From Perna viridis (Eukaryota), in contig CM074516.1 in NCBI GenBank assembly GCA_037379345.1, positions 31,161,626 to 31,225,625 on the forward strand: DNA of 64,000 bases. Direction: 5' to 3'. Both the position numbers and the translations under genes were made by a program. How positions within the stretch are numbered: position 1 is the stretch's first letter; every line of letters starts with the position of its first letter. The notes beneath the pieces were generated by a model. The model had not been told where the DNA came from and did not search any database. It saw only the letters and a program-made list of their open reading frames with translations. Shown piece after piece: positions 48,701-51,700 of this stretch.

Positions 48701-51700
48701 CAAATTATATGCTAAAAAGCTAATACTTCCTTATAAATTGGAAAAGATTTGGATCAATGATTTTAATAACTAAGGCCGTAATTACACAATTAAGGTATGT
48801 CAATTTAGCATTAAATTGACCATTGGTAAACAACAGCAGAAATTATGTTCATGAATATACCTTAAAAATGAATACAAGCAACAACAAAAAAAAAAAACTA
48901 CAATCAAAATAATTGTTTGTGGTTACTTGCATTTCAAAGGGTGATAACTGTAGAACTGTTTGAAATTTTGCCAAAATGACTTCATAATAGTAGTTTGTGA
49001 TTTGCGTGTACAAAATTGTTACAAATACTATTATTAAACAACTTCAAATGAAAATCCTAGTTCTGATTTTAAATTTCTTTTCCATTAAATTTCATATTTC
49101 TGACAAGAAATCTGTTATCCAATCCCAACTAGTGATACCCTCACCAAGACTTAACTATATGGTTAAAATTGTAGCCCAGCCATTGACCAAAATGTTTCTA
49201 CTACCCAAGCAGTTTCTCAAATTAGAGGCTGCTATCTCTGAAGTTATATTTAAGGTAGATCATACCGAATCTTTCTAGTGTAAAGATTTTCTTAATATTT
49301 CTCAAAGATGACCTTGAATGAAAATTCTTAAGAATTTTAAAGTAAAAAACATGTCATCAAACTTGATTTTGAGATAAATGAGGCTTAATAAATTTGTTAC
49401 AACATTTTGTATACCGGTAGATTCTAAAGGGCATTTTCACTACTTTGCAAACTATTATAAACTGGTATATTGAATTTCTTGTAAATTTTCAAAAAGACAA
49501 TTTAGGGTCTCTGAACTCTTCTTCTTATAATATTATAATAACTAAAATTTATTGAGTGTTCAAAACTTTTTCACTTTTTGGCTCACCGAAAGGTCAAGAA
49601 AGTTATGAAATATATACATATATATTTTTCAATCTGCGATTTTTATTTGATAAAAAAAAATTCAATGTCCCATCATAAAGTTTCACACAATGCAATGACA
49701 TTCATTTCTTGCCTAAGGCTTAAATGTACCTCATCCATGATTTTTTTTGCATTCTCCACATTAACATGTGTGACCAATTTCATTAACTGTTATACAGTCT
49801 ATCGAAAGATATCCCCTCCCCTAAAGTTGAAAACATAAAAATGTGACTATTGAAATATTGTATGTCTACTTGAAAATCAAAACATTTGTAGATATAATAA
49901 GTGAACAGGTCATTTACCTACCAATTCTGGCTATGAGAGTTAATATCCCTTCACTTTACATTTTAAGACCCCGATCTTACCAATATCCATCCAGATAAGT
50001 AAGGTATGTAAAAAAGTAAACATTATTTTATGTAAAAAATAAATACCACAAATTTGTTTATATACCTACACAAAAAAAAACATTACACAAAACCAAAAGA
50101 AAGTGTAATTCAATATGAATTAGGTCTAGAGTTAGCTGTTTTAGTAGGATTAGTTACAACACACAACATGTTTTGTAGGAGTAAGGCAGAGAACAAAGAA
50201 TTGCCACCCTTTGAAATCTTCCCTCAAGTGCCATGGATACAGATATCAGACTGCAATTGAAGACATTAAACAATGACATCAATTTTGACATATTTTGGTA
50301 AGGTCAATATTCAATGAGTGATCCTTAAAGGCTTTAGAACAAAAAAAATATAATGAAACACTTAAAATATGCCAACATTAAAAAGAACCATAAATTAAGA
50401 CTAATTTCAAAATTTTAAAGACTGAAATGACTCACATTGCAATGTCATAATTGCTATGCAGTGAAAAGTGCACATGTGAAGTAAAATACATTACAGTTTG
50501 TACCAAATTTTATCTAATAAGTGAACCAAATCATAAAAGTCATTTTGTAAAGTGACGAGTTTCAACATTATTACAATCATAGGTTCTACCTGACAGTATT
50601 TACAATAGTTTCATCTATGCAACAGATTTTACAACATAAGCAAGTTCTGAGATGCACCATATCATCAAGACAATGCAGCTGTTACATTTCATGCTCACAG
50701 ACAACAAAAAAACAAGCAATAACACAAAAACAAATAAAAGGGAAAACAACATTATTATGCTAAAAATATAATGCATAAGTAAAGAAAAATCATTCAAATA
50801 AAGATTGAAAGAAAATGTGCCATACTCTCCCATCATACAGAAGAATGCACCACATTTGGTCCCTAACTTAATGAGTTGTTTTCTGGTGATTTGTGAGATG
50901 CAATGAGTGAATTTTAAGTGTAGAGTTCCAATGGCTTCCACCACCTGAGCCACACAATTTGTCATTAGAAAATAAATAAAGCATTACACACAACAAATGC
51001 ATTTATTTAAAAGAAAGGGGTGAGGCAGGGAGACCCATTCTTGCCTTATCTTTTTAAGACCAAAAATAAAAAATATACTGACATTTAACTTAAAATGGAA
51101 CTCACCTGTTCAAGACATATATAACATCTCACCCATCCCAAATTTAAAAAAAAATTCTAAAGCAACATAGCCTTGGAACAAATAACTTCAAAGTTAGACA
51201 TTTTATGAATTTTTAAAATAAATAATCTCAGTGTGAATGGAAACTCATCGGAACCCTGCAGCCTTCTATCATGAATGATTTTCTCACCGTTGGCGCCAGA
51301 AGTTTTACACAAGCGGTGGTTCATATGTTGGCTGTAGGATCCAGAGTGAGAGAAACGTTTGAGGCATCGCTTACATTGGAAAGGCTTTTCTCCTGTATGG
51401 AGCCTCTTGTGTTCTGTCATGTGATGCTTGTGTTTGAAGGCCTTACCACAGATATCACATGGATACCGACGGGGACCTAAAATTTAAATCAATGGGGAAA
51501 TACAAGTATATTACAGATGGTGTACAACCATTTGACAAAGTTTATTTTAATATTGAAATCTGAATACTTTTGATATCCAGCAAATCATGCAACGAAAATT
51601 CCTGTAGATTTACATAGGACCCCATTGCCAAAAAAAATAATAGTCACCAAAATACACTTTGATAATTGCAGGGCCATTTTGATAAAATATTTAAACAACC

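What the first reader, a model, noticed from the sequence alone, without database searches (positions are those of the whole stretch)
51288..51476. SMARCE1/BAF57 appears to carry a ZEB/Zfh1-type zinc-finger cassette exon, giving a chromatin remodeller subunit its own sequence-specific DNA-binding module
Seen in sequence: a lone 189-nt exon with two C2H2 fingers lies between SMARCE1 exons 54302-54083 (ends phase 1) and 45832-45717 (starts phase 1). It is on the same strand, has canonical splice sites and keeps the frame. No other ZEB parts (N-terminal finger cluster, homeodomain) were seen nearby. Established: [36 protein letters not shown] is the signature of the last two fingers of the ZEB1/ZEB2/Zfh1 C-terminal cluster, which bind CACCT(G) E-boxes. 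Vertebrate and fly BAF57/BAP111 have only a non-specific HMG box. Inference: exon shuffling produced a BAF57-ZnF chimera. Because the exon is symmetric, alternative splicing could switch BAF between untargeted and E-box-targeted forms. A basic NLS-like stretch ([12 protein letters not shown]) immediately precedes the fingers. I cannot confirm that this is undescribed.
Basis: partly seen in the sequence, partly recalled or inferred. Interest (0 to 1): 0.85.

Follow-up and report, generated by a model that had tools for sequence, protein, structure and literature searches.

The report
Mussel BAF57 with optional ZEB fingers
In a mussel, the chromatin-remodelling subunit SMARCE1/BAF57 has an optional 63-residue exon, confirmed by RNA reads and conserved in evolution, that adds two zinc fingers of the kind the transcription factor ZEB uses to read CACCT sites, so some remodelling complexes may carry their own sequence reader.

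Summary
Window 51288-51476 (minus strand) is a real 189-nt, phase 1-1 cassette exon of SMARCE1.

- **Splicing:** stranded RNA-seq from two studies shows the junctions 54083->51476 and 51288->45832, and the skip junction 54083->45832. Inclusion is about 33-59% by junction reads.
- **Host gene:** it is the single-copy SMARCE1. Its HMG box and post-HMG region match human SMARCE1 best.
- **Encoded module:** two C2H2 fingers, 75% identical to the last exon of the species' own ZEB gene. Helix positions -1, 1, 2, 3, 5 and 6 of both fingers are identical. The acceptor sits at the same phase-1 position as the ZEB intron between C-terminal fingers 1 and 2.
- **Selection:** orthologous exons in five contigs from other assemblies are alike only inside the exon. 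Synonymous sites are saturated and pN is 0.06-0.08.
- **Gastropods:** in Bulinus, Plakobranchus and Elysia, a ZEB-type finger "mini-gene" lies just downstream of SMARCE1 on the same strand and is annotated as a separate gene.

DNA binding to CACCT-type sites and targeting of BAF complexes are inferred, not shown. I found no paper describing this. I could not check whether full-length fusion isoforms are already in protein databases. It is a new variant of known kinds.

The parts
51288..51476 (-). 189-nt phase 1-1 cassette exon encoding two ZEB CZF2/CZF3-type C2H2 fingers
   Evidence: Sequence and translation. Pfam zf-C2H2. Junction reads on both sides. Conserved exon island under purifying selection.
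54083..54302 (-). Constitutive SMARCE1 exon upstream of the cassette: Ser/Asp-rich, ends with the basic patch [12 protein letters not shown], ends in phase 1
   Evidence: Its donor is joined to 51476 (9/12 reads) or to 45832 (18/16 reads).
45717..45832 (-). Coding part of the last SMARCE1 exon (acidic tail, stop TAA at 45719-45717). It is the acceptor for both the cassette and the skip form.
   Evidence: In one search, the loose-end consensus at 51288 and at 54083 is the reverse complement of this exon's start.
54640..54720 (-). 81-nt SMARCE1 exon spliced to 54302
   Evidence: The loose-end consensus behind 54304 is located at 54642-54662. Splice sites were read.
60309..60500 (-). SMARCE1-specific conserved region; the exon lies inside the open frame 60255-60530
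   Evidence: phmmer match to human SMARCE1 residues 176-238, E=1.1e-22. Single copy in the genome. 72% identical to the Bulinus SMARCE1 exon.
63583..63744 (-). Open frame holding the HMG-box exon of SMARCE1 (exon ends not mapped)
   Evidence: Pfam HMG_box E=2e-11. The best solved-structure match is the human SMARCE1 HMG box, 7cyu, E=2e-20.
55905..57680 (-). Span holding three further SMARCE1 open frames, the coiled-coil and Gln/Pro-rich parts (57519-57680, 56862-57110, 55905-56234). Exon ends were not mapped.
   Evidence: ORF list. The frame 57519-57680 aligns with the Bulinus SMARCE1 coiled-coil exon, 68% identity.

Best explanation
Shown: the single-copy SMARCE1/BAF57 gene of this mytilid mussel makes two mRNA forms. 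One skips and one includes a 189-nt in-frame exon in its last intron. The included exon adds 63 residues between a basic [12 protein letters not shown] patch and the acidic C-terminal tail. These residues form two C2H2 fingers homologous to the last two fingers of the ZEB/Zfh1 C-terminal cluster.

Inferred origin: the last exon of ZEB, with its acceptor, was copied at the DNA level into or beside the 3' end of SMARCE1. In the mussel lineage it later gained a 5' splice site.

Inferred function: helix positions -1, 1, 2, 3, 5 and 6 are identical to the species' own ZEB fingers. The long isoform should therefore recognise a CACCT-type half-site. Since BAF57 is a core BAF subunit, this would give a fraction of BAF complexes a built-in sequence reader at ZEB/E-box sites. 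Splicing would set the ratio of targeted to untargeted complexes.
For: - Splicing: joint 54083->51476 in 9 and 12 raw reads and in contigs of two other runs. At the cassette donor, 26 and 8 reads continue into the last exon. 18 and 16 reads show the skip form. Reads lie on one strand only, which fits a minus-strand RNA. Depth drops to about 1 or less just past the donor, so the exon is not used as a terminal exon.
- SMARCE1 identity.
- ZEB origin: the species' own ZEB gene on C7 has an N-terminal finger cluster, a homeodomain, and a last exon that begins at the same phase-1 position (ag|GT.. before xRPxxC). The cassette is 75% identical to it. The finger helices KHKHHMTEH and SHSGSYSQH differ from ZEB only at the core position 4 of finger 1, M for L.
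- Selection: five contigs from other assemblies match the window only inside the exon. pS is 0.92-1.0 against pN 0.06-0.08. Two of them differ by 16 synonymous and 0 non-synonymous changes. AG and GT sites and phase are kept.
- Linkage beyond mussels: in Bulinus truncatus, Plakobranchus ocellatus and Elysia marginata, a Lys-rich exon and a ZEB-type finger exon lie 1.6-6.4 kb downstream of the HMG-box SMARCE1 gene on the same strand. Their start phase matches that of the annotated SMARCE1 last exon.
- Literature: two fingers of each ZEB cluster are crucial in vitro for binding CACCT(G) (PMC8304685). Vertebrate ZEB1 recruits the BAF ATPase BRG1 (Sanchez-Tillo 2010, as cited in PMC13026001).
Against: - There is no binding or localisation data for this protein.
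- Two fingers read only about 6 bp, and full ZEB uses two clusters on two half-sites, so affinity and specificity on their own may be low.
- Gastropod fingers differ at helix positions -1 and 1 of finger 1 (Q, R for H, K).
- Splicing of the gastropod finger exons to SMARCE1 is untested.
- The tree of 58 columns is unresolved. One origin for the mussel and gastropod exons is not rejected (AU p=0.17) but also not shown.
- Inclusion estimates rest on few reads and differ between the two junctions.
- The organism B contig is identical to the window over 414 nt, so it is not independent evidence of conservation.
Confidence: 0.6

Rival explanations
1. The cassette is real and selected, but the fingers do not target BAF to DNA sequences. 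They would serve as a protein- or RNA-binding surface. Alternatively, the long isoform would act outside BAF as a competitor that blocks ZEB sites.
For: C2H2 pairs can mediate protein contacts. Two fingers alone give limited specificity. The insertion lies in the C-terminal tail, outside the HMG box and the conserved region that match human SMARCE1.
Against: Base-contacting helix positions are identical to ZEB, and the canonical TGEKP linker is kept under strong purifying selection. That pattern is what DNA reading would predict. A basic patch sits directly in front of the fingers.
Confidence: 0.25
2. The mussel cassette and the gastropod finger exon were acquired independently, as two separate captures of a ZEB 3' exon next to SMARCE1, rather than inherited from a common molluscan ancestor.
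For: The unconstrained tree does not group them. Forcing them together costs 12 log-likelihood units. The architectures differ: an internal cassette before the acidic last exon in the mussel, and a terminal exon with its own stop after the acidic exon in gastropods.
Against: - The AU test does not reject one clade (p=0.17).
- The same host gene, strand and 3' position in both classes is unlikely by chance.
- Both share R-[RK]-[YFH] in place of the ZEB R-P-x before the first Cys, and a shortened spacing after the last His.
Confidence: 0.25
3. The exon belongs to a separate nested gene or retrocopy, or its inclusion is splicing noise without function.
For: In three gastropod genomes, annotators called the finger exon a separate small gene.
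Against: Reads join it to SMARCE1 exons on both sides, in frame, at about 33-59% of junctions. It has an intron-derived acceptor at the ZEB intron position, so it is not a retrocopy. Synonymous sites are saturated while amino acids are almost unchanged.
Confidence: 0.03

Closest known systems
SMARCE1 / BAF57 (fly BAP111), core HMG-box subunit of BAF (SWI/SNF) remodellers
   Same: HMG box, the conserved post-HMG region (human residues 176-238), coiled coil, acidic tail, and single copy.
   Different: The described vertebrate and fly proteins have only the non-specific HMG box (my knowledge). Here an optional exon adds two sequence-reading C2H2 fingers near the C-terminus.
[quoted passage not shown]
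   Same: The cassette matches the last two CZF fingers: the signature [35 protein letters not shown], identical helix contact positions, and the same phase-1 intron in front.
   Different: It has no N-terminal cluster, no homeodomain and no first CZF finger. It sits in another gene. In the mussel it has gained a 5' splice site in place of the ZEB stop codon.
ZEB1 recruitment of BRG1 in vertebrates (Sanchez-Tillo et al. 2010, cited in PMC13026001)
   Same: It links ZEB-type DNA recognition with the BAF remodeller.
   Different: In vertebrates the link is a protein-protein contact between separate gene products. Here the ZEB-type reader is part of a BAF subunit's own polypeptide.
BAF subunits that carry C2H2 fingers (BCL11A/B, DPF1-3); recalled from my own knowledge, not tested here
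   Same: They are zinc-finger modules inside BAF complexes that add targeting.
   Different: They are different subunits and finger families, encoded by dedicated genes, not a splice-controlled module on BAF57.

Membership tests
SMARCE1/BAF57 | HMG box | tested here: met
   Window 63583-63744(-): Pfam PF00505 E=2e-11, 44.6 bits against a cut-off of 25.4. The best solved chain is the human SMARCE1 HMG box, 7cyu, E=2e-20.
SMARCE1/BAF57 | Conserved region after the HMG box (human residues about 176-238), followed by a coiled coil | tested here: met
   phmmer E=1.1e-22 to human SMARCE1 residues 176-238; it is the only PDB hit. The coiled-coil exon aligns with the Bulinus SMARCE1 exon.
SMARCE1/BAF57 | Incorporation into BRG1/BRM complexes | not testable with these tools
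   Needs co-immunoprecipitation or mass spectrometry.
ZEB/Zfh1 transcription factors | N-terminal zinc-finger cluster plus a homeodomain in the same protein | tested here: not met
   tblastn of the species' own ZEB (811-aa exon, CZF1 exon, last exon) against the window hits only 51298-51483. The true ZEB gene is on contig C7.
ZEB/Zfh1 transcription factors | Sequence signature of C-terminal cluster fingers 2-3 | tested here: met
   75% identity to the species' own ZEB last exon. In one search the genome's closest paralogous matches were that exon (79%) and an exon on C4 (71%). Helix residues are identical except M for L at position 4 of finger 1.
ZEB/Zfh1 transcription factors | Binding to CACCT(G) | not testable with these tools
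   Inferred from identical contact residues. The literature on ZEB fingers is in PMC8304685.
C2H2 zinc finger (Pfam PF00096) | Two C-x2-C ... H-x3-H units with a TGEKP linker | tested here: met
   PF00096 at 34.5 bits against a cut-off of 25.2, two stretches. The sequence was read.
Alternatively spliced cassette exon | Both inclusion junctions and the skip junction seen in RNA, with the frame kept | tested here: met
   9/12 reads (upstream junction), 26/8 reads (downstream junction), 18/16 reads (skip). 189 nt = 63 codons.

The most novel reading that the evidence does not exclude
The ZEB-finger module on SMARCE1 is an ancient molluscan invention, dating from before the bivalve-gastropod split. 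It would hard-wire E-box/CACCT recognition into a core BAF subunit. Alternative splicing would then switch BAF between untargeted and ZEB-site-targeted forms, so that the remodeller competes or cooperates directly with the ZEB repressor at the same sites.
Probability: 0.3. Interest if true: 0.8.

Novelty: new variant of a known kind. Interest (0 to 1): 0.66.

Why it matters
BAF complexes are usually thought to find their targets through separate transcription factors. Here a core subunit carries, under splice control, the DNA-reading fingers of one such factor.

This would be a natural fusion that supports the ZEB-BAF link known from vertebrates. It is also a clean, dated example of exon shuffling that kept the donor gene's intron position.

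It offers a simple experimental handle, two isoforms that differ by 63 residues, on how a sequence reader changes where a remodeller goes.

It also shows that three published gastropod annotations probably split one gene into SMARCE1 and a "zag-1 / zinc finger protein 1" mini-gene.

Tried and rejected
- **Representative search:** phmmer of the 62-residue exon against the 1.84-billion-protein library was swamped by poly-zinc-finger proteins whose many fingers add up.
- **Homologue searches:** The search for homologous proteins sees only 0.55-1.75 times the query length, so full-length SMARCE1-plus-finger proteins could not be reached from single exons. Whether such isoforms already sit in RefSeq or UniProt is therefore unknown. 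The third search added no taxa beyond the six gastropod mini-genes.
- **Tree:** the tree of the finger pair (58 columns) is unresolved, and the AU test is inconclusive at p=0.17.
- **DNA comparison:** blastn between the ZEB last-exon region and the cassette region finds nothing, so the copy is too old for DNA-level dating.
- **Solved structures:** the search with the fingers returned only generic C2H2 proteins and no ZEB entry.
- **Flanking exons in orthologous contigs:** the five contigs (1.2-3.5 kb) are too short to show neighbouring SMARCE1 exons. Linkage in those species is therefore assumed from exon orthology alone.
- **Literature:** two searches for SMARCE1/BAF57 with zinc finger, mollusc or ZEB found nothing relevant.
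- I reran it from references.
- **Rejected readings:** nested gene, retrocopy and splicing noise, for the reasons given under the rival explanations.

Full report
**1. The observation.**
On the minus strand, window 51476-51288 is bounded by ttttag| and |gtgaga and is 189 nt long. Read in phase 1 it encodes 62 full codons with two C2H2 fingers and a TGEKP linker. Pfam zf-C2H2 passes its cut-off, 34.5 against 25.2 bits.

The exon 54302-54083 ends ...[20 protein letters not shown] plus one base. The exon 45832-45717 begins with two bases of a codon and ends in TAA. Both the cassette and the last exon begin with GT, so either one completes the same AGT (Ser) codon.

**2. Is it spliced into SMARCE1?**
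Nineteen small run assemblies from seven studies hold the whole exon. I laid window 48500-54400 on two raw, stranded RNA-seq runs from different studies (X20, X21) and on two contig sets (X5, X10).

| Junction | X20 reads | X21 reads | Contig runs |
|---|---|---|---|
| 54083->51476 (inclusion, upstream) | 9 | 12 | X5 contig (1913 nt), depth 107; X10, depth 42 |
| 51288->45832 (inclusion, downstream; loose ends at the cassette donor) | 26 | 8 | X5, one contig loose end |
| 54083->45832 (skip; loose ends at the 54083 donor) | 18 | 16 | X10, one contig loose end |

- The loose-end consensus at both donors is the reverse complement of the start of the last exon.
- By junction reads, inclusion is 33-59% in X20 and 33-43% in X21. 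By contig depth in X10 it is about 43%.
- Exon depth (22-27) stands well above intron depth (0-4), and depth falls to about 1 or less right after the cassette donor. The exon is therefore not used as a terminal exon.
- All reads have the first mate on +, as expected for a minus-strand RNA in a usual stranded library.
- The X5 contig (organism B) has no differences from the window over 414 nt. It is the same or a very close species and not independent evidence of conservation.
- Reads behind 54304 lead to a further 81-nt exon at 54720-54640.

**3. Host gene and organism.**
- The open frame 63583-63744 is an HMG box (Pfam E=2e-11). Its best solved match is the human SMARCE1 HMG box (7cyu, E=2e-20).
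- 60309-60500 matches human SMARCE1 residues 176-238 (E=1.1e-22; it is the only PDB hit) and occurs once in the 723-Mb genome.
- The closest named relative of the species' ZEB protein is Mytilus galloprovincialis at 74%; other bivalves are at 41-45%. The genome is therefore a mytilid mussel, but not Mytilus itself. Earlier notes of this scan also call it a mussel.
- Matches fell only on contigs C1-C15. Fifteen chromosomes and this genome size would suit Perna. That is my guess, not a result.

**4. Where the fingers come from.**
- In the own genome, the nearest relatives of the cassette are an exon on C7 (79%), an exon on C4 (71%) and a stretch of an 811-aa open frame on C7 (63%).
- The C7 gene is the true ZEB. 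It has an N-terminal finger cluster and a homeodomain in the 811-aa frame (Pfam Homeodomain E=6.5e-14), then an exon with C-terminal finger 1, then a last exon with fingers 2 and 3 and the stop. Its relatives are named ZEB, zfh1 or zag-1 across animals.
- That last exon starts at tttttag|GT GCC AGA CCA..., the same phase-1 position as the cassette acceptor.
- Many genomic fragments of ZEB genes from other phyla also begin at this point, so the intron is old.
- The cassette therefore looks like a DNA-level copy of the ZEB 3' exon, acceptor included, and not a retrocopy.
- No DNA similarity remains between the two regions, and nothing else in the window resembles ZEB.
- Helix positions -1, 1, 2, 3, 5 and 6 of both fingers are identical to the species' own ZEB. 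Only the core position 4 of finger 1 differs, M for L.

**5. Selection.**
A search with the exon's open frame found genomic open frames from other assemblies with 85-89% identity over the whole exon (P0152-P0156). Their contigs match the window only inside the exon, at 76-78% DNA identity; the introns do not align. They keep AG and GT at the same or a compatible phase.

Nei-Gojobori counts over 55 codons:

| Comparison | Synonymous | Non-synonymous |
|---|---|---|
| Window against each of four of these contigs | pS 0.92-1.0 (saturated) | pN 0.06-0.08 |
| L022 against L023 | 16 changes | 0 changes |

This is strong purifying selection. They are probably other mytilids, which is an inference.

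**6. Beyond mussels.**
Three gastropod annotations carry small genes that consist of a Lys-rich stretch, two ZEB-type fingers and a short acidic tail:
- Bulinus truncatus "zag-1" (P0240, P0241)
- Plakobranchus ocellatus "Zinc finger protein 1" (P0255)
- Elysia marginata (P0256)

In all three genomes this mini-gene lies 1.6-6.4 kb downstream of an HMG-box gene on the same strand. In Bulinus the upstream gene has the SMARCE1-specific exon (72% identity, E=2e-29) and the coiled-coil exon.

The gastropod finger exon is terminal and has its own stop. In Bulinus and Plakobranchus the Lys-rich exon before it starts in phase 1, as does the annotated acidic last exon of SMARCE1. One upstream donor could therefore serve either exon in frame.

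Mussel and gastropod finger exons share R-[RK]-[YFH] before the first Cys, where ZEB has R-P-x. They also share a shorter spacing after the last His. The 58-column tree is unresolved, and a single clade is neither shown nor rejected (AU p=0.17).

**7. How it most likely works.**
- *Shown:* there are two isoforms that differ by a 63-residue two-finger module placed after a basic patch and before the acidic tail.
- *From the literature:* ZEB binds CACCT(G) through its two finger clusters, and two fingers in each cluster are crucial in vitro (PMC8304685). By my recollection of Remacle et al. 1999, these are the last two fingers of the C-terminal cluster. Vertebrate ZEB1 recruits BRG1 (Sanchez-Tillo 2010, cited in PMC13026001).
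- *Inferred:* the long isoform reads a CACCT-type half-site, helped by the basic patch and the HMG box. It thus places or holds a share of BAF complexes at ZEB/E-box sites, and splicing sets that share.
- *Alternative:* the fingers act as a protein or RNA contact, or the isoform acts as a competitor at ZEB sites.

**8. Comparison and novelty.**
The protein is a member of the SMARCE1 family; both defining features that could be tested were met. It is not a member of the ZEB family, because it lacks the N-terminal cluster and the homeodomain. It only carries the CZF2-3 module of ZEB.

I found no paper on a finger-bearing BAF57.

I rate it a new variant of known kinds: domain shuffling plus a splice switch on a core remodeller subunit.

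**9. Verdict.**
The functional reading is plausible but untested. My confidence is about 0.97 that this is a genuine, selected SMARCE1 cassette encoding ZEB-type fingers. It is about 0.5-0.6 that the module confers CACCT-type targeting on BAF.

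Noticed in passing
L003:1495-1770 (G000:C4:25028074-25028349): A second lone exon with a ZEB-type finger pair, 71% identical to the cassette. 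It starts at the same phase-1 position and ends G|gtaatt in phase 1. It sits in a different, unidentified multi-exon gene on contig C4. A 351-aa open frame with no Pfam hit follows 2 kb downstream, then a frame with a weak C2H2 hit. Relatives exist in other assemblies (P0174, P0184, P0214). It may be a second capture of the same ZEB exon.
   Followed up: partly
L020:8352-8395; L021:4250-4290; L030:3620-3665: Just past the annotated stop of the gastropod SMARCE1 acidic last exon, all three species keep a stretch that reads [IL]D[LF]A[VT]LE[VIL]L[KN][LW][LM]-stop in another frame. It ends at a GTA(A/G)A that looks like a splice donor. This could be a conserved 3'UTR element, an alternative frame or an alternative donor. 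It is unexplained.
   Followed up: no
window 49485-49730: A local rise in RNA depth inside the last SMARCE1 intron in run X20 (7.7 against about 1-2 around it), with 5 molecules ending at 49730. It may be a minor exon, a repeat or an intronic transcript.
   Followed up: no
window 61330-61494 and L015:5680-6006: Two similar minus-strand open frames (...[19 protein letters not shown].HHELxD...GVSICxMKTDLFN...) lie in or just upstream of the 5' part of the SMARCE1 gene. They look like copies of a dispersed repeat or mobile element.
   Followed up: no
many proteins (e.g. P0166, P0168, P0203, P0248): Genomic fragments of ZEB genes from nematodes, insects, flatworms, molluscs and vertebrates nearly all start with junk and then G-x-R-P. 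The phase-1 intron between C-terminal fingers 1 and 2 therefore seems conserved across bilaterians.
   Followed up: partly
L028:1964-2194 (JGI metagenome contig): A terminal exon with a ZEB-type finger pair, 80% identical to the cassette. It shares the R-R-H motif before the first Cys and a short C-terminal spacing. Its host organism and gene context are unknown. No SMARCE1 exon was found on the 4.7-kb contig.
   Followed up: partly
L018+L014 (G000:C4:25011800-25015500, minus strand): A cluster of long minus-strand open frames (up to 253 aa, rich in acidic and basic runs) lies upstream of the C4 finger exon. It is probably a mobile element.
   Followed up: no
window 54120: An extra T in 3 of 39 reads of run X21, inside the A-run of the KKAKK coding stretch. 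It is most likely a sequencing or polymerase slip.
   Followed up: no
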